NCBI GenBank assembly: GCA_002269645.1
Contig: NIVC01002394.1
Location: forward strand, 62,001-126,000
Source: Macrostomum lignano
Taxonomy: Eukaryota
DNA: 64,000 bases
Reading direction: 5' to 3'
Part shown: positions 21,568-46,165 of the stretch, one piece after another
Layout of the letters: every line of letters starts with the position of its first letter
Position numbering within the stretch: position 1 is the first letter of the stretch
Notes under the pieces: model-generated
Databases searched by the model: none
Seen by the model: the letters and a program-made list of their open reading frames with translations, nothing else
Told to the model about the DNA's origin: nothing
Position numbers and translations under genes: made by a program

Positions 21568-29216
<7,649 letters not shown>

Positions 29217-37337: not shown

Positions 37338-40300
37338 ATGGCAGAAGCATTTGTAACACTTGCCACCAATGACTCCTATGCGCTTGGCGCAATTGTTTGG
37401 GCTAACTCTCTGCGCAATGTTAATACTACCAAGCAAATCTGCGTTATGATCACAGATGGTGTTAGTCCGCAGTTCAGGTAAGTTAAGTGAACTAATGAGA
37501 TGACGAGGCGTTTAACCATCGTAGTACATTAATAGTTACTCCCGCCGATTACCCGGAATTTTTATAATCTGTAAATGTGAATCATTTAGGCAAGCCCTGG
37601 CACGCGTAGCTGACCACGTAGAGATGGTGCAGCCTCTCGACAGCAGCGACCCGGCCAATTTGGCTCTGCTTGGCCGGCCAAACCTTGGCTGCACATTCAC
37701 CAAGCTGCACTGTTGGCGTCTGATTCGCTACACTAAAGCCGTCTTCATGGACTCCGACACCCTGGTAATGGCTAATATTGACGATCTGTTAGAACGCGAG
37801 GAGCTCTCGGCCGCGCCAGATCCTGGCTGGCCCGACTGTTTCAACTCTGGCGTGTTTGTCTATCGGCCTAGCGAGGACACTTACAGGTAAAGGCTGTGAC
37901 TAGGGTAGGTAGAGTAGCCAGTATAGCAGTAGGGTAGGTAGAGTAGCCAGTATATCAGTAGAGTAGGTAGAGTAGCCAGTATAGCAGTAGGGTAGGTAGA
38001 GTAGCCGGGGTAGGCAGCCAGCACTGTGGGGTAGACAGCCAGCACAGTGGGGTAGGCAGCCAGCACAGTGGGGTAGGCAGCCAGCACAGTGGGGTAGGCA
38101 GCCAGCACAGTGGGGTAGGCAGCCAGCACAGTGGGGTAGGCAGCCAGCACAGTGGGGTAGGCAGCCAGCACAGTGGGGTAGGCAGCCAGCACAGTGGGGT
38201 AGGCAGCCAGCACAGTGGGGTAGGTAGGCAGCCAGCACAGTGGGGTAGGCAGCCAGCACAGTGGGGTAGGCAGCCAGCACAGTGGGGTAGGCAGCCAGCA
38301 CTGTGGGGTAGGCAGCCAGCACAGTGGGGTAGGCAGCCAGCACAGTGGGGTAGGCAGTGAAGCAGCTGCCAGCACAGTGCTGCTCACTCCGCATCCGCAG
38401 GCGCCTGCTAGACTTCGCTCGCAGCTGCACCAGTTTCGACGGCGCCGACCAAGGCCTGCTGAACATGTTCTTCAACGACTGGGCCACTAAGGACATCACC
38501 AAGCACCTGCCATTCACCTACAACTGCGTGTCGCAGGCCTTCTATTCCTACTTGCCAGCGTTCCGTCATTTCCGACGCGACATCAAGGTGGCCCACTTCA
38601 TCGGCGAAGTGAAGCCGTGGCATCACTCGTACAACAGCGCCACAGGGCAGGTTGAACCGCGCGAAGGCACCGGGCACCAATCGGAGTTTCTGCAGCAATG
38701 GTGGGACATCTACGTCACCCAGGTGCACGCTATGCTGCCAGCCGGAGCTGTAAGTGTGCAGTTAGTTACCTGCGGCCTCTAGCAGATTGATATTCTCATA
38801 TTCAAGCATAAATTAATATGTTGTTATAATTTCTATCATTAACTTCTAGCCAGCAGCTGGGGATGCGGTAAGCCAGTGTATGGTAGAGTGTCATTGTCCC
38901 GTGTTGTTCAGCTGATGTATTAGTCAATTGGAATGCATCACGTGCATCCTATCTTGCATTTTATGCAACATATATAAATCCTTCTGATTTCATATTTAGA
39001 TCTGTTACAAATCGTAATATTTAATAACTGTGTATATAGACTAGCGCAACTTATAATTCACTCTAGATCTCTTTACAATCGGCACCAACTTATCATAGAT
39101 TGTCATTGTACGGTTAATTAATTTTTAATTAGAACTGTGTTATGATTATGATTATTAATTTTTATTAGCTTAATTGCACAATAGTATCTGACTGACTCTT
39201 ATTATCCAGTCTAACAGCCTTCGCTGAGGGGCTGGTTGGAGAGTTTTGGGTATGGAACGGAGTGGAAAAGCTTTGGAGGCATTCGCGAATGGGTTTGGGG
39301 ATGGGAAAAGGGCTGAAAGTTTGGGAGAGAAAAGCTTACTTAGTTGCAGAGATTTCATTTTGTGTATTCTGCAGACTTAGGGGGCAGGGTGGCTGGTCAG
39401 GAATGCGCTGGGCTTTCATTGTACACTACTTTCCCTATTCTAAATGTACATTGGATTTTGTACTGGCCTTCCGCGCAACGAGGCCGCTTCTACACCAAAA
39501 TCTGTTCCAGTTAGTGTCAACTATTGAAGATTGTTAGTTAGTCAGCAAGGAGACTGGGGGCAGAGGGGGTTTTGACATTTTTCGATGCGATACTATATAT
39601 AGTTTGTAACTTTACTTTATGTACTTTTTGCAATGTGCCAACATTGATTGACCTTCATTTGTTCTATGATTTAATCGTTGCGAAACGAGCAATACGATGT
39701 AGAAGTACATTCTGAACTTGAATTTCAACGATTTTCTTTTTATCTATTGTGCTTTGGTTGGGGAATCGAGTCCCGGACCTCTGCTGGGATATCACTACCC
39801 GTATTTCAACGCTTCGCGAACACACAAAACGCAGCGCCTGCTGCCAGACAGTCCCGAACTGGCCGAGGCCGCTCGCCAGCGTCGCCGCGTGCTAGCCGTT
39901 ATCAGCGGCACTCGCCGATTGGTTCGCCTACGCCGGAGCCGTCTAGTCCGCCGGCTTGGCAACCGCCAGTGGGGCTGGTCGTCGGCAACTGGGACGACAA
40001 CTAACGAGGCCGGTTTTGTTAGAATCCGCCGCAGCCAGAATCGCCTGGTCGAGGCGCTGCTGTTGCCGCCGCTGGCCTCGTCGGCTTCGTCCAGCTCCGG
40101 TCGGAGGCTCCGTCTGGCTGGCGAGCGCACATTCTGCTCCATCGTTCGTCAGCCCGCGGCGGCCACTTCAATGTTGACAACAACATCAACAACGACAACT
40201 TCGACAACAACAATAAGGACGCCTGCGTCATCTGTTGTGGTGTTCAGACCGGCCACTTTGCCAGCTGCGGACTGCGGCGTCGAGGCTGGGTCATTCACCA

Positions 40301-43300
40301 GGCACACTTTCATCACCCCGCTGGCCAAGCCGGATCCCAAGTCTGTGCACTCGGTTCGCATCAAGCAGAGTAAGAATAAGGCGGCAGCCGCCACGGCCGC
40401 TGCTGATGAAGAGGCGCAAATTGAGGTGGCTAGGACTAGTCGTTCCAGCACCACCACGGTGACGGTGACAGCGGCCGCCTTGGCTGATCGGCTGTTCGAA
40501 GCGCTCCACTTGGAGCCGCCAGCTCAGGAGCAGCTGGAGCGGTCGCGGATTCTAGCCCCGGCTGCTGAGATTGACGACTCCTACATTACTCGGCGAGTAG
40601 AGGAATTTGACGAGTCGGCAACCACTGGCGCGTCAGAGTATTATGAAGAATTCTATGACGAATATTATGACGAATCGGAACTACCTGTTGAGGTTTGGAT
40701 ACACGCCACTGAGATTTGCGAGATAACTCTCTGGCTGGCTTGCTATCTAACACAGTGTGCATTAACAGCGGCCCTACGTATTCAAATTTGCTTTGATTTC
40801 AAGGACACGGGAGCTGAAGTCTTTGATGAGTCAAGAGATTCGTTCCAAATCTCTTTCCAAACTCCGGTGTCTAAGTCTTCACTACGCGTCAGTAGGTCCA
40901 TGCAGCTGTCAGCTTGCAGTGTTTACTGCGCGTATCTTTCCTTTAACATCTTTGAAGGAATCTTTGAATACCTTAACGGTCTTGCTCACTTGTTTGGGTC
41001 TTGCTGCGATATTGATATTGAAGACTGCATTGTGGTCCTGAGTGGAAGGTCCTCGAATCGAATCCCGATTGGTTTCATTAATCTACCGCAATAATGCGTG
41101 TCCTAACAAAACAACATTTTCCTATAAAATAAAGAATACTGCAGTTTTTATGTGGATACATCGATTTAACAAAGATTGTTGCTGTTTTCATGGGCTGCGC
41201 CCAGTCTTTGAAGTTTATAATAACAAATGCTTACAGTATTTTAAAGATTTGTTGTTGTTCTAAACTGGCTAATTGTGCAGTGGGTTCGCGGAGCGTTTAG
41301 AGTTTATTTCATTGAACGATGGCCAAAATTTTATTGTTAAAACCAGCAACTATTAGAAAATAGAGAGAAGAATGCCGCAAGGGGTCTCCGATTAACTCGT
41401 TCTACTCAAACACGTGCTGCTAGTGCTGTCTGTCTGTCTGTCTGCGTCTGTTGCGTCCACCCCACGCCCCCGATAAGCCCCTCCGGCCTAGTTGTTGTGC
41501 CCGAAGGCAAATCTAGCACAAAATGCCGCCTTTATTTAAAATAGATAAAAGACTGGCAGAATTGTGCTGTCGGTGTTGTATCTCTTTGCATTCTTGTGCA
41601 CGTCGTTACACGCTATTATCGGGACGGAGGAGGGCCCGTGCTGCGTACATTTCTGTGACTCGGCTGGGTTGAGCAACAGTTGACAGGCCGAATTAGTAGA
41701 GAGCAGTTGTAGAGAGGAAAGGTCACGCAGCTTTATCGTGTTACGCAGTTGGCTTGCTTAATACGCCATTGGAGTAGAGTCTGACTGGGTATGCACGACA
41801 ATCTGATATCTGCCTCGGTCATATAAGACCTCGCAGGCTCTTGCACCCGTCACGCTTCCGTTCCGCTCTGTTGAAGGCTTTTTATTCGCTATTCGTATTG
41901 CATCGTTTGTCCATTCTCTATGCGCGAGTCTTTTCTGCCACTTGAAGGGAGGGCAGAGTTAGGCACAGAATCTGAGCCTTGTCTTGTGTCTGCTCTGCCC
42001 CGCTCTCCGCTGGCGTGATTCATTATTTTTCTGTGGCGGACTTTTGTGCCTTAGTCCAGTTGCGCTATACAAGCTGCAACGTAACTAAACTTTGTACCTT
42101 AGAGCAGTGGCTGGCAAGAAAAATATACAAGCCCCCCCCCCTGGGGCGATTTTACAGTCCAACTGGCAGTGTGAGACAGTCTGAGATAGCGTGGGTTAAA
42201 GTAGATAAATGTAACAAATTGGTTAGTGCTGTTTTTCGAATAACATGTAAACAGTTTTTTTTGTTGACTGGAACAATTTCAAATGCAAATTCCCAGTGAC
42301 CAATTAGCAGAAATGCAAAGTTTAAGAATGCATGCTGATAAAAAAGGTAAACAATCAAATTTAGTGCAACGTATTTGCGCACAAAACTAATCTCTTATAT
42401 CTGATCATGCTCAATAACTGAGAGTAGTCCTTGACTATTGTGTGTCATAACACTCACTAGTGTGTTTCATTATCTCACTTTTTGTATTAATGATTTTTAC
42501 CGACTGTTCACAGTTGGACACTAGAGCTGTGTTGTACGATTGTGTTGCTAGTACTTTGTAGCGGTAGCATCGGGGCAGATTGTAACAGCAGTAGCATCGG
42601 GGCAGATTGCAACAGCAGTAGCATGGGGGCAGATTGTAACAGAAGTAGCATCGGGGCAGATTGTAACGGCAGTAGAATCGGGGCATATTTCAACAGCAGT
42701 AGAATCGGGGCAGATTGCAAAAGCAACAGAATCGGGGCAGATTGCAACAGCAGTAGAATCGGGGCAGATTGCAACAGCAGTAGAATCGGGGCAGATTGCA
42801 ACAGCAGTAGAATCGGGGCAGATTGCAACAGCAGTAGAATCGGGGCAGATTGCAACAGCAGTAGAATCGGGGCAGATTGCAACAGCAGTAGAATCGGGGC
42901 AGATTGCAACAGCAGTAGAATCGGGGCAGATTGCAACAGCAGTAGAATCGGGGCAGATTGCAACAGCAGTAGAATCGGGGCAGATTGCAACAGCAGTAGA
43001 ATCGGGGCAGATTGCAACAGCAGTAGAATCGGGGCAGATTGCAACAGCAGTAGAATCGGGGCAGATTGCAACAGCAGTAGAATCGGGGCAGATTGCAACA
43101 GCAGTAGAATCGGGGCAGATTGCAACAGCAGTAGAATCGGGGCAGATTGCAACAGCAGTAGAATCGGGGCAGATTGCAACAGCAGTAGAATCGGGGCAGA
43201 TTGCAACAGCAGTAGAATCGGGGCAGATTGCAACAGCAGTAGAATCGGGACAGATTGCAACAGCAGTAGAATCGGGGCAGATTGCAACAGCAGTAGAATC

Positions 43301-43728
43301 GGGGCAGATTGCAACAGCAGTAGAATCGGGGCAGATTGCAACAGCAGTAGAATCGGGGCAGATTGCAACAGCAGTAGAATCGGGGCAGATTGCAACAGCA
43401 GTAGAATCGGGGCAGATTGCAACAGCAGTAGAATCGGGGCAGATTGCAACAGCAGTAGAATCGGGGCAGATTGCAACAGCGATAGAATCGGGGCAGATTG
43501 TCACCGAGACCCATTCGCGATTTGCAGGCGTCAAGCCAGGGTGAGCGAATCGCTTTGTCGCAGCAGGGCGGCGGCGGCGGCGACGGCGGCGGCGGCGGCG
43601 GTGCGGCGGGAGGCGCTGCCGGAGGTGGCAACCGTCGGGAGGCCTGGGAGCGAGGCGAAATCGACTACCTGGGCAGTGACAGGTTCGATAACGTGCTGTC
43701 TCGCCTGCGGGAGAACATCCAGGACTGA
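37338..43728 (+). CDS. GYG1: Glycogenin (GT8), 328 aa; exons 37338-37477, 37590-37886, 38401-38749, 43528-43728
   Basis: [24 protein letters not shown] (DxD), [32 protein letters not shown] (autoglucosylation Tyr), HFIGEVKPW and the C-terminal synthase-binding motif [20 protein letters not shown]. Phases 2,2,0; total 987 nt. Confidence 0.96.
37903..38357. repeat. 22-bp minisatellite (ggtaggcagccagcacagtggg) preceded by a related ~29-bp unit, glycogenin intron 2
   Basis: Direct tandem copies filling most of the intron. Confidence 0.95.
38850..38867 (+). CDS. Candidate 18-nt in-frame microexon of glycogenin (PAAGDA)
   Basis: Pyrimidine-rich acceptor ttctatcattaacttctag and donor cg|gtaagc. 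Phase 0/0 matches intron 3. Confidence 0.55.
39835..41094 (+). CDS. Candidate alternative terminal exon of glycogenin or a nested gene (419 aa, low-complexity, acidic/Tyr cluster, hydrophobic C-terminal part)
   Basis: Non-repetitive stop-free frame 39718-41094. Phase-0 acceptor (aaaacgcag) at 39834. AATAAA at 41128-41133. Confidence 0.5.
   Translation, partial: RLLPDSPELAEAARQRRRVLAVISGTRRLVRLRRSRLVRRLGNRQWGWSSATGTTTNEAGFVRIRRSQNRLVEALLLPPLASSASSSSGRRLRLAGERTFCSIVRQPAAATSMLTTTSTTTTSTTTIRTPASSVVVFRPATLPAADCGVEAGSFTRHTFITPLAKPDPKSVHSVRIKQSKNKAAAATAAADEEAQIEVARTSRSSTTTVTVTAAALADRLFEALHLEPPAQEQLERSRILAPAAEIDDSYITRRVEEFDESATTGASEYYEEFYDEYYDESELPVEVWIHATEICEITLWLACYLTQCALTAALRIQICFDFKDTGAEVFDESRDSFQISFQTPVSKSSLRVSRSMQLSACSVYCAYLSFNIFEGIFEYLNGLAHLFGSCCDIDIEDCIVVLSGRSSNRIPIGFINLPQ
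42563..43500. repeat. 27-bp minisatellite (gcagattgcaacagcagtagaatcggg), ~35 copies, glycogenin intron 3
   Basis: Near-perfect array ending ~28 nt before the acceptor at 43527. Confidence 0.98.
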
Positions 43729-44662: not shown

Positions 44663-44812
44663 AGTACTAGCGTACTTGAGTACTAGCGTACTTGAGTACT
44701 AGCGTACTTGAGTACTAGCGTACTTGAGTACTAGCGTACTTGAGTACTAGCGTACTTGAGTACTAGCGTACTTGAGTACTAGCGTACTTAAGTACTAGCG
44801 TGCTTGAGTACT
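44663..44812. repeat. 16-bp minisatellite (actagcgtacttgagt), ~9 copies
   Basis: Direct tandem units. Confidence 0.93.
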
Positions 44813-45591: not shown

Positions 45592-46165
45592 AGAAAGGAA
45601 GCTGGGGTTGGTCAGGGAAAGGGGATGCGGGTGCTGAGGTTGGTCAGGGAAAGGAGAGGCGGGTGCTGGGGTTGGTCAGGGAAAGGGGAGGCGGGTGCTG
45701 ATGGTCAGGGAAAGGAGAGGCGGGTGCTGATGTTGGTCAGGGAAAGGGGAGGCGGGTGCTGGGGTTGGTCAGGGAAAGGGGAGGCGGGTGCTGGGGTTGG
45801 TCAGGGAAAGAGGAGGCGGGTGCTAGGGTTGGTCAGGAAAAGGGGAGGCGGGTGCTGATGTTGGTCAGGGATAGGGGAGGCGGGTGCTGAGGTTGGTCAG
45901 GGAAAGGGGAGGCGGGTGCTGAGGTTGGTCAGGGAAAGGGGAGGCGGGTGCTAGGGTTGGTCAGGGAAAGGGGAGGCGGGTGCTGATGTTGGTCAGGGAT
46001 AGGGGAGGCGGGTGCTGAGGTTGGTCAGGGAAAGGGGAGGCGGGTGCTGAGGTTGGTCAGGGAAAGGGGAGGCGGGTGCTAGGGTTGGTCAGGGAAAGGG
46101 GAGGCGGGTGATGGGGTTGGTCAGGGAAAGGGGAGGCGAGTGCTGGGGTTGGTCAGGGAAAGGGG
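45592..46165. repeat. 32-bp G-rich minisatellite (gggttggtcagggaaaggggaggcgggtgctg), ~18 copies
   Basis: Direct tandem units. Confidence 0.95.

What the first reader, a model, noticed from the sequence alone, without database searches (positions are those of the whole stretch)
39718..41133. Hidden 1.3-kb ORF may give glycogenin an alternative tail that drops the glycogen-synthase-binding motif
Seen: a non-repetitive open frame inside intron 3 on the sense strand, a phase-0 acceptor at 39834 matching the exon-3 donor, and AATAAA 33 nt after the stop. The product has an Arg-rich start, Thr/Ser/Ala tracts, [15 protein letters not shown] and hydrophobic Cys-rich C-terminal stretches. Known: glycogenin binds glycogen synthase through the terminal W..G..DY.G.D.F motif, which here is in exon 43528-43728. 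Inference: mutually exclusive last exons could produce a ~680-aa, possibly membrane-anchored glycogenin uncoupled from synthase. A weak phase-0 donor at 40693 would instead make it a cassette exon that keeps the motif.
Basis: partly seen in the sequence, partly recalled or inferred. Interest (0 to 1): 0.7.

Follow-up and report, generated by a model that had tools for sequence, protein, structure and literature searches.

The report
Glycogenin linker cassette exon, already annotated
The long open frame inside the flatworm glycogenin gene is mostly an optional middle exon, already in public protein models, that lengthens the flexible linker and keeps the glycogen-synthase-binding end; the supposed new tail is intron read-through that stays open in only this one of three gene copies.

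Summary
The window is Macrostomum lignano scaffold NIVC01002394.1. The frame is a composite.

Codons 40-325 (39835-40692, 858 nt, phase 0 at both ends) look like coding sequence: GC 0.61 and strong 3-base periodicity. They are open and free of indels in all three genomic copies. UniProt models A0A1I8I0Q4 and A0A1I8IS51 already include them as an internal exon joined to the last exon, so the synthase-binding motif is kept.

The 133 codons after the GAG|GT donor look like intron: GC 0.45, GC3 0.46 and no periodicity. They have no credible homologue among 1.84 billion proteins and no membrane-helix-grade hydrophobic stretch. In both other copies an extra T gives a TAA 60 codons after the donor.

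The RNA-guided GenBank models of all three copies encode only the short, cassette-skipped isoform. Six molluscs and a nemertean have annotated short and long glycogenin isoforms that differ by a 166-229-aa insert at the same place.

Verdict: this is an ordinary alternative linker cassette that is already annotated. The "alternative tail that drops the motif" reading is not supported, although no RNA data could be examined here.

The parts
37338..37477 (+). Glycogenin exon 1 (ATG at 37338; donor CAG|gtaagt)
   Evidence: Translation matches GenBank PAA58266 (P0124) and the glycogenin N-terminus.
37590..37886 (+). Exon 2 (GT8 catalytic domain, contains FMDSDTL)
   Evidence: Period-3 signal is 3.3x the mean.
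38401..38749 (+). Exon 3 (end of the catalytic domain, contains AFYSYLPAF; ends in phase 0, GCT|gtaagt)
   Evidence: Period-3 signal is 7.2x the mean.
39718..39834 (+). Intronic in-frame run-in to the ORF (39 codons before the acceptor)
   Evidence: GC is 0.44. It lies upstream of the acceptor cgcag| that the UniProt models use.
39835..40692 (+). Alternative cassette exon, 858 nt = 286 codons. It encodes an Ala/Arg/Thr/Ser-rich linker that ends in [19 protein letters not shown]. Both splice sites are weak (acacacaaaacgcag| and GAG|gtttgg).
   Evidence: Included in UniProt A0A1I8I0Q4 and A0A1I8IS51. GC is 0.607 and GC3 is 0.64. Period-3 signal is 5.7x the mean, reached by 0 of 300 shuffles. Open with no indel in 3 copies. 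Splice sites are identical in 3 copies. Skipped in the RNA-guided GenBank models.
40693..41094 (+). Intronic read-through of the frame (133 codons plus TAA), open only in this copy
   Evidence: GC is 0.446 and GC3 is 0.459. Period-3 signal is 0.8x the mean. There are 8 substitutions in 402 nt, and an extra T after 40871 in L001 and L003 gives TAA. No credible homologue, no PDB match, no TM-grade hydropathy.
41128..41133 (+). AATAAA hexamer; its use as a poly(A) signal is untested
   Evidence: It is conserved in 3 copies, but the hexamer occurs 0.8 times per kb in the window.
42560..43500 (.). 27-nt tandem repeat (about 35 copies) in the last intron, ending 27 nt before the acceptor
43528..43728 (+). 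Last exon with the glycogen-synthase-binding (GN34-like) motif. An alternative acceptor at 43564 is used in A0A1I8IS51.
   Evidence: It aligns to human GN-1 residues 302-329 (7zbn_E) and the C. elegans GYG-1 peptide 4qlb_G.

Best explanation
The locus is one of three near-identical copies of the single-type glycogenin gene of Macrostomum lignano. The gene has three exons for the GT8 catalytic domain and a last exon for the C-terminal glycogen-synthase-binding helix pair.

Between them lies an 858-nt exon (39835-40692) with weak splice sites that can be skipped or included. Because it starts and ends in phase 0, both choices keep the frame. Skipping gives the 328-aa canonical protein. Inclusion gives a 614-aa protein in which a 286-residue low-complexity linker separates the catalytic domain from the synthase-binding motif.

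The rest of the 458-codon ORF is intron that happens to be stop-free. That is 39 codons upstream of the acceptor and 133 codons downstream of the donor. The downstream stretch is stop-free in this copy only, because of a 1-bp difference.

Shown here: the exon boundaries, the coding-like statistics, the presence of the exon in existing models, and the non-conservation of the tail. Inferred: the exon is actually included in a minority of mRNAs, and its effect is to lengthen the tether between glycogenin and synthase. Linker length was shown in vitro to tune glycogen particle size (cited in PMC9188544).
For: Identity of the locus and existing models:
- P0002 (A0A1I8I0Q4) is identical to the 5-exon model of this window from PLDSS onward. 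It joins ...AMLPAGA|RLLPDS...ELPVE|ASSQGER....
- P0001 makes the same joins using acceptor 43564.
- The window is identical to NIVC01002394.1.

Coding signal:
- Cassette GC is 0.607, GC3 is 0.64 and period-3 signal is 5.7x the mean (0 of 300 shuffles). The tail has GC 0.446, GC3 0.459 and period-3 signal 0.8x, like the introns.

Three-copy alignment:
- The cassette has 0 indel events, where 3.6 are expected from the flanking rate (P=0.028), and 0.82 substitutions per 100 bp.
- The tail has 1.99 substitutions per 100 bp, plus an extra T in both other copies that gives a stop 60 codons after the donor.
- The cassette splice sites are identical in all copies.

Other evidence:
- The tail has one database match, a 17-residue match to an 8-fold repeat protein that is judged spurious, and no PDB match. 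Its maximum 19-residue Kyte-Doolittle mean is 1.36.
- The linker is known to vary in sequence and length, and its length governs particle size in vitro (PMC9188544).
Against: - No transcript data could be examined.
- The RNA-guided GenBank annotation gives only the cassette-skipped 336-337-aa product for all three copies. Inclusion therefore rests on the UniProt gene models alone, and I do not know what evidence those models were built on. That GenBank set was also filtered against repeat-overlapping transcripts (PMC5730564), so absence there is weak evidence.
- Substitutions among copies in the cassette are 5 nonsynonymous and 2 synonymous (omega about 0.8). This gives no sign of amino-acid-level constraint, though the counts are tiny.
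- Substitution-density contrasts are not individually significant.
- The cassette shows no sequence similarity to the inserts of other species (hhalign probability 0.1%).
Confidence: 0.7

Rival explanations
1. The donor at 40693 is not used, transcripts are polyadenylated after the AATAAA at 41128, and a ~681-aa glycogenin is made with a novel Cys-rich hydrophobic tail and no synthase-binding motif.
For: In this copy the frame stays open for 133 codons past the donor, which happens in only 0.085% of dinucleotide shuffles. The donor GAG|gtttgg is weak. AATAAA lies 33 nt after the stop and is conserved in 3 copies.
Against: - The tail has intron-like GC and GC3 and no period-3 signal.
- Both other copies carry an extra T that gives TAA 60 codons after the donor, so the distal 73 residues, which include the Cys-rich stretch, are not conserved even among ~98%-identical copies.
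- The tail's substitution density is the highest of all segments.
- It has no credible homologue in 1.84 billion representative proteins.
- It has no TM-grade hydrophobic window, and charged residues sit inside the hydrophobic stretches.
- No annotated model ends here.
- The 1-bp difference could even be a residual error of the PacBio/Pilon assembly in a duplicated region.
Confidence: 0.07
2. The cassette is not an exon at all. It would be a GC-rich, fortuitously open or fossil segment of the intron that an ab initio predictor incorporated, and only the short isoform exists.
For: RNA-guided GenBank models of all three copies skip it. Omega among copies is about 0.8. The cassette has no homologue outside M. 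lignano. The same UniProt models contain an evident error elsewhere: 34 residues of the catalytic domain are missing.
Against: - It has 286 stop-free codons (0.015% of shuffles) with exon-like GC inside a ~40% GC intron.
- It has a strong period-3 signal, like the bona fide exons.
- Its length is a multiple of 3 and both boundaries are in phase 0.
- It has no indel in three copies, while the flanking intron has 12 indel events.
- Its position is the same as the annotated cassettes of six other spiralians.
Confidence: 0.2
3. A separate nested gene in the intron, for example trans-spliced at the 39834 acceptor and polyadenylated at about 41150.
For: M. lignano trans-splices many mRNAs (PMC5730564). 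An acceptor and an AATAAA bracket the ORF.
Against: No gene is called inside the intron in the RNA-guided annotation of any of the three loci. The first in-frame ATG is 113 codons into the cassette. The 3' part is frame-broken in the other copies.
Confidence: 0.03

Closest known systems
UniProt A0A1I8I0Q4 / A0A1I8IS51 (Macrostomum lignano 'glycogenin glucosyltransferase' gene models)
   Same: They contain the cassette residue for residue (A0A1I8I0Q4 is identical to this locus from PLDSS onward). They join it to the last exon, which carries the synthase-binding motif.
   Different: These models lack 34 residues of the catalytic domain because of a different intron call in exons 1-2, and they start at AFVTL. 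The two models use different last-exon acceptors (43528 and 43564).
GenBank PAA58266.1 (BOX15_Mlig029655g2), PAA92011.1, PAA61148.1: RNA-guided models of the three gene copies
   Same: Same gene. PAA58266 is this locus. The catalytic exons and last exon are identical to the window.
   Different: They skip the cassette, joining exon 3 directly to 43528, which gives a 328-aa coding part.
Long and short 'glycogenin-1-like' RefSeq isoforms of molluscs and a nemertean (Haliotis, Aplysia, Pomacea, Mytilus, Patella, Lineus)
   Same: The isoform pairs differ only by a 166-229-aa insert at the same place, between the end of the GT8 domain and the C-terminal W-E-x-G-x-x-D-Y-x-G-x-D-x-F motif.
   Different: Their inserts share motifs with each other (FPYVPP, ETHYxEEP). 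The M. lignano cassette shares none of them (hhalign probability 0.1%). It is also longer (286 aa) and Ala/Arg/Thr/Ser-rich.
Variable-length glycogenin linker described for human and C. elegans glycogenin (Zeqiraj et al. 2014, as cited in PMC9188544)
   Same: A disordered tether between the catalytic domain and GN34. It varies in sequence and length, and its length modulates glycogen particle size in vitro.
   Different: No functional data exist for the flatworm. Here the linker length would be switched by one cassette exon.

Membership tests
Glycogenin (GT8 self-glucosylating glucosyltransferase) | GT8 catalytic domain (Pfam PF01501) | tested here: met
   P0001 and P0004 carry PF01501. They are 55-61% identical over the full length to mollusc and flatworm glycogenins.
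Glycogenin (GT8 self-glucosylating glucosyltransferase) | DxD metal/UDP-glucose motif and the acceptor tyrosine in the (F/I)YSYLPAF context | tested here: met
   FMDSDTL and [10 protein letters not shown] are present in exons 2-3. They match FMDADTL and [10 protein letters not shown] in the homologues. The roles of these residues come from established knowledge of rabbit and human glycogenin.
Glycogenin (GT8 self-glucosylating glucosyltransferase) | C-terminal ~34-residue glycogen-synthase-binding region (GN34) | tested here: met
   Last-exon residues 34-61 align to human GN-1 302-329 (7zbn_E, E=5e-4) and to the C. elegans GN34 peptide 4qlb_G.
Glycogenin (GT8 self-glucosylating glucosyltransferase) | Self-glucosylation activity | not testable with these tools
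   Needs an enzyme assay.
Alternative linker cassette of glycogenin (long/short isoforms) | The insert lies between the catalytic domain and GN34, and both inclusion and skipping keep the frame | tested here: met
   The cassette is 858 nt with phase 0 at both ends. Exon 3 ends and the last exon starts in phase 0. The position is the same as in six spiralians.
Alternative linker cassette of glycogenin (long/short isoforms) | Both isoforms documented as transcripts | tested here: inconclusive
   The short form is in the RNA-guided GenBank models (PMC5730564). The long form is only in UniProt gene models of unknown evidential basis.
Alternative linker cassette of glycogenin (long/short isoforms) | Sequence homology of the cassette to the cassettes of other species | tested here: not met
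   hhalign probability is 0.1% against the 6-species insert alignment. The only database hit is M. lignano itself.
   GC3 is 0.459 with flat GC1/2/3. Period-3 signal is 0.8x the mean.
   L001 and L003 have an extra T after 40871 that gives TAA, and the frames downstream are full of stops.
   The best 19-residue Kyte-Doolittle mean is 1.36, below the usual 1.6 threshold. D, E and R residues lie inside the candidate stretches.
   No RNA 3'-end data are available here. The hexamer alone occurs 0.8 times per kb.

The most novel reading that the evidence does not exclude
In this one of three recently duplicated copies, a 1-bp difference has fused two open stretches. Skipping the weak donor and using the AATAAA at 41128 would then yield a copy-specific 681-aa glycogenin without the synthase-binding motif. 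That would be a nascent divergence of a duplicated gene. A separate speculation is that the acidic Tyr-rich [13 protein letters not shown] end of the cassette provides extra glucosylation acceptor tyrosines; this rests on my recollection of the multiple acceptor tyrosines of yeast Glg proteins.
Probability: 0.05. Interest if true: 0.45.

Novelty: already known. Interest (0 to 1): 0.12.

Why it matters
It matters little beyond annotation hygiene. The result reconciles two public annotations of the same gene: the UniProt long form and the GenBank short form appear to be the two splice outcomes of one cassette exon. It also flags that the UniProt models drop 34 catalytic-domain residues.

If inclusion were confirmed, M. 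lignano would offer a transgenesis-capable animal in which to test in vivo the in-vitro observation that glycogenin linker length sets glycogen particle size.

The more striking claim, a membrane-anchored glycogenin uncoupled from synthase, is not supported.

Tried and rejected
- Homology search of cassette plus tail. It found only M. lignano's own models.
- Exhaustive HMMER search of the tail alone. The one hit is a 17-residue match (LSHYFGECPDIDIEK against [15 protein letters not shown]) repeated 8 times in a prokaryotic-looking repeat protein. I rejected it as chance.
- PDB sequence search of cassette plus tail. Nothing was found.
- Profile comparison of the cassette with the mollusc and nemertean inserts. 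No similarity.
- Look-up of the contig encoding P0001. It is not on record; the loci were reached through the GenBank proteins instead.
- BLASTN of 40693-42500 against the window and L001, to test for a repeated element. Only the syntenic match appeared, so the tail is not a repeated element within the sequence held.
- dN/dS and substitution-density contrasts among the three copies. The direction is as expected, but there are too few differences for significance.
- An attempt to read Wasik et al. 2015, to learn how the UniProt-source models were built. The paper is not held.
- Structure prediction of the orphan low-complexity segment. I did not run it, because a single-sequence model would be uninformative.
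Full report
**What is there.** It runs from 39718 to 41094 on the + strand and is 458 codons long. It lies in the largest intron of a glycogenin gene. The exons, fixed by translation and by comparison with database proteins, are:
- exon 1, 37338-37477
- exon 2, 37590-37886
- exon 3, 38401-38749, ending in phase 0 with GCT|gtaagt
- a last exon, 43528-43728

An AG at 39833-39834 gives a phase-0 exon start at 39835. A GT at 40693-40694 follows GAG in phase 0. The stop is at 41092-41094, and AATAAA at 41128-41133 lies 33 nt later. The last exon encodes [27 protein letters not shown]. This aligns to residues 302-329 of human glycogenin-1, the part modelled bound to glycogen synthase in 7zbn, and to the C. 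elegans GN34 peptide of 4qlb.

**Whose genome, and what is already annotated.** A protein search with the frame from 39835 to the stop returned one cluster: three UniProt 'glycogenin glucosyltransferase' models of the flatworm Macrostomum lignano.
- A0A1I8I0Q4 (P0002, 577 aa) is identical to my 5-exon model of this window from PLDSS onward. It reads ...HAMLPAGA|RLLPDSPEL...DESELPVE|[15 protein letters not shown]...ENIQD. In other words it uses exactly the 39835 acceptor and the 40692|40693 donor, then continues into the last exon.
- A0A1I8IS51 (P0001) does the same but enters the last exon at a second acceptor, 43564.

So 286 of the 458 codons are an annotated internal exon. They are not hidden, and in those models the synthase-binding motif is retained.

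A second search, using the cassette-less protein, found three GenBank proteins of the Mlig_3_7 assembly: PAA92011, PAA58266 and PAA61148, of 336-337 aa. All three join exon 3 directly to 43528. Fetching their contigs showed that the window is identical to NIVC01002394.1 and that PAA58266 is this very locus. It also supplied two further genomic copies, L001 and L003, which are about 98% identical to the window including the introns. According to Wudarski et al. 2017, the GenBank annotation derives from a genome-guided RNA-seq assembly, with gene ends set by experimental trans-splicing and poly(A) data. It was then filtered to remove transcripts overlapping repeats (PMC5730564). The same paper explains the redundancy: the sequenced DV1 line carries duplicated chromosomes.

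**The ORF is a composite.** Its three parts behave differently.

| Segment | GC | GC3 | Period-3 signal (x spectral mean) | Shuffles reaching it |
|---|---|---|---|---|
| Cassette 39835-40692 | 0.607 | 0.64 | 5.7 | 0 of 300 |
| Exon 2 | 0.577 | - | 3.3 | 0 of 300 |
| Exon 3 | 0.595 | - | 7.2 | 0 of 300 |
| Last exon | 0.707 | 0.773 | 4.6 | 0 of 300 |
| Tail 40693-41091 | 0.446 | 0.459 | 0.8 | 54% |

(Values are. GC3 for exons 1-3 combined is 0.683. The two intron control segments gave period-3 signals of 0.5 and 1.6.) The tail's GC1, GC2 and GC3 are flat at 0.459, 0.421 and 0.459. The 39 codons before the acceptor have GC 0.44.

**Comparison of the three gene copies.**

| Segment | Length (nt) | Variable substitution sites | Per 100 bp | Indel events |
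|---|---|---|---|---|
| Exon 3 | 349 | 2 | 0.57 | 0 |
| Cassette | 858 | 7 | 0.82 | 0 |
| Intron 38750-39834 | 1085 | 19 | 1.75 | 5 |
| Tail | 402 | 8 | 1.99 | 1 |
| Intron 41095-42500 | 1406 | 15 | 1.07 | 6 |

- From the flanking rate, 3.6 indel events would be expected in the cassette, so finding none has P=0.028.
- The tail has the highest substitution density of all segments.
- Both other copies carry one extra T after window position 40871 (GTGTC-TAAG against GTGTCTTAAG). It puts TAA in frame 60 codons after the donor, and the downstream frame is then full of stops.
- The acceptor, the donor and the AATAAA are identical in all three copies.

The 133-codon stop-free run is rare by chance (0.085% of dinucleotide shuffles). 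The three-copy alignment shows how it arises: it is two moderately long open stretches in different frames, fused in this copy alone by a 1-bp difference. The assembly is PacBio/Canu polished with Pilon. In copies that are 98% identical, a residual indel error cannot be excluded, and in that case the long tail would not exist at all.

**Further tests of the tail.**
- A word-index-free HMMER search of the 133 residues against 1.84 billion representative proteins gave one hit. It is a 17-residue match repeated eight times in a repeat protein, which I regard as chance.
- The tail has no PDB match.
- The most hydrophobic 19-residue window has a Kyte-Doolittle mean of 1.36, with acidic or basic residues inside each candidate stretch. 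It falls short of a membrane helix.
- AATAAA occurs 52 times on this strand of the window (0.8 per kb), so its proximity to the stop carries little weight.
- The region is not a repeated element within the sequence I hold.

**How it most likely works.** The cassette has the weakest splice sites of the gene. Its acceptor has a purine-rich tract (acacacaaaacgcag|) and its donor is GAG|gtttgg, whereas the constitutive donors are CAG|gtaagt, CAG|gtaaag and GCT|gtaagt. That fits an exon that is mostly skipped. It also fits the RNA-guided models showing only the short form.

Because the cassette is 858 nt long with phase 0 on both sides, both outcomes are in frame: a 328-aa canonical glycogenin or a 614-aa form. 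The added 286 residues are 47% Ala, Arg, Thr and Ser and end in an acidic, Tyr-rich stretch. They sit exactly between the catalytic domain and the synthase-binding region.

This is the known variable linker of glycogenin. [quoted passage not shown] The same architecture is annotated in other Spiralia. In Haliotis, Aplysia, Pomacea, Mytilus, Patella and the nemertean Lineus, the long and short isoforms differ only by a 166-229-aa insert at this position. Those inserts share motifs among themselves, but the flatworm cassette shares none of them (hhalign probability 0.1%). The correspondence is therefore one of position and presumed role, not of demonstrable sequence homology.

**What remains open.** I could examine no RNA data. 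Inclusion of the cassette rests on four things: gene models whose evidential basis I could not check (the source paper is not held), the coding-like statistics, the absence of indels, and the cross-species analogy.

Among the three copies the cassette has 5 nonsynonymous and 2 synonymous differences (omega about 0.8). That shows no amino-acid-level constraint, though the numbers are far too small to decide. I therefore give 0.7 to 'a genuine, mostly skipped cassette exon' and 0.2 to 'a predicted but never-used pseudo-exon'. In two of the three copies such transcripts would carry only a 60-residue non-conserved tail. A nested, separately trans-spliced gene gets 0.03, since no gene is called in the intron at any of the three loci.

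**Novelty and verdict.** The real feature is already in UniProt, and its kind, a linker-length isoform of glycogenin, is established. The surprising part of the finding, a motif-less and possibly membrane-bound glycogenin, is not supported. The residual value is in annotation. The long UniProt models and the short GenBank models appear to be the two splice outcomes of one cassette exon. The UniProt models also wrongly omit 34 catalytic-domain residues. Interest is low.

Noticed in passing
window 38851-38868: Candidate 18-nt micro-exon with strong splice sites (tttctatcattaacttctag|CCAGCAGCTGGGGATGCG|gtaagc), in phase 0, encoding PAAGDA. It is identical in all three gene copies but absent from every annotated model. 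It would add six residues just after the catalytic domain.
   Followed up: partly
window 37419-37632: The three UniProt models (A0A1I8I0Q4, A0A1I8IS51, A0A1I8I638) splice AAT|gt (37419) to cag| (37632). This drops 34 residues of the GT8 domain ([34 protein letters not shown]) that the RNA-guided GenBank models keep, so it is probably a prediction error. A0A1I8I638 also ends by reading through the exon-3 donor (…[13 protein letters not shown]).
   Followed up: partly
window 43528 and 43564: There are two in-frame acceptors for the last exon, 36 nt apart (atttgcag|GCG and gtcgcag|CAG). The GenBank models and A0A1I8I0Q4 use 43528, while A0A1I8IS51 uses 43564. The difference is 12 residues ([12 protein letters not shown]) of the linker.
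   Followed up: no
window 37901-38357 and 42560-43500: Large intronic minisatellites lie inside the gene. Intron 2 holds a 29-mer x3.7 followed by a 21-mer x16.5. A 27-mer x35 ends 27 nt before the last-exon acceptor. They create long spurious ORFs on both strands, and they coincide with the places where the alignments to the other copies break. The gene spans 6418, 7866 and 5580 nt in the three copies.
   Followed up: partly
window 27311-29216 (and L001, L003 starts): The upstream neighbour on the same strand is a 929-aa ankyrin-repeat / Ion_trans (TRP-like) channel gene that ends near 29216. An 11-nt-register tandem repeat at about 28566-28926 within or next to it aligns at many offsets between copies.
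   Followed up: no
L001 (NIVC01000067.1:731185-759050), L003 (NIVC01002065.1:18285-43864), window = NIVC01002394.1:62001-126000: The whole locus (TRP-like channel plus glycogenin) is present three times in the Mlig_3_7 assembly at about 95-98% identity, introns included. This matches the published chromosome duplication of the DV1 line. L001 and L003 share 8 states against the window within 39700-41200.
   Followed up: partly
window 44663-44812 and 45601-46165: Two further tandem repeats lie downstream of the gene: a 16-mer x9.4 and a G-rich 32-mer x17.8 with strong GC skew.
   Followed up: no
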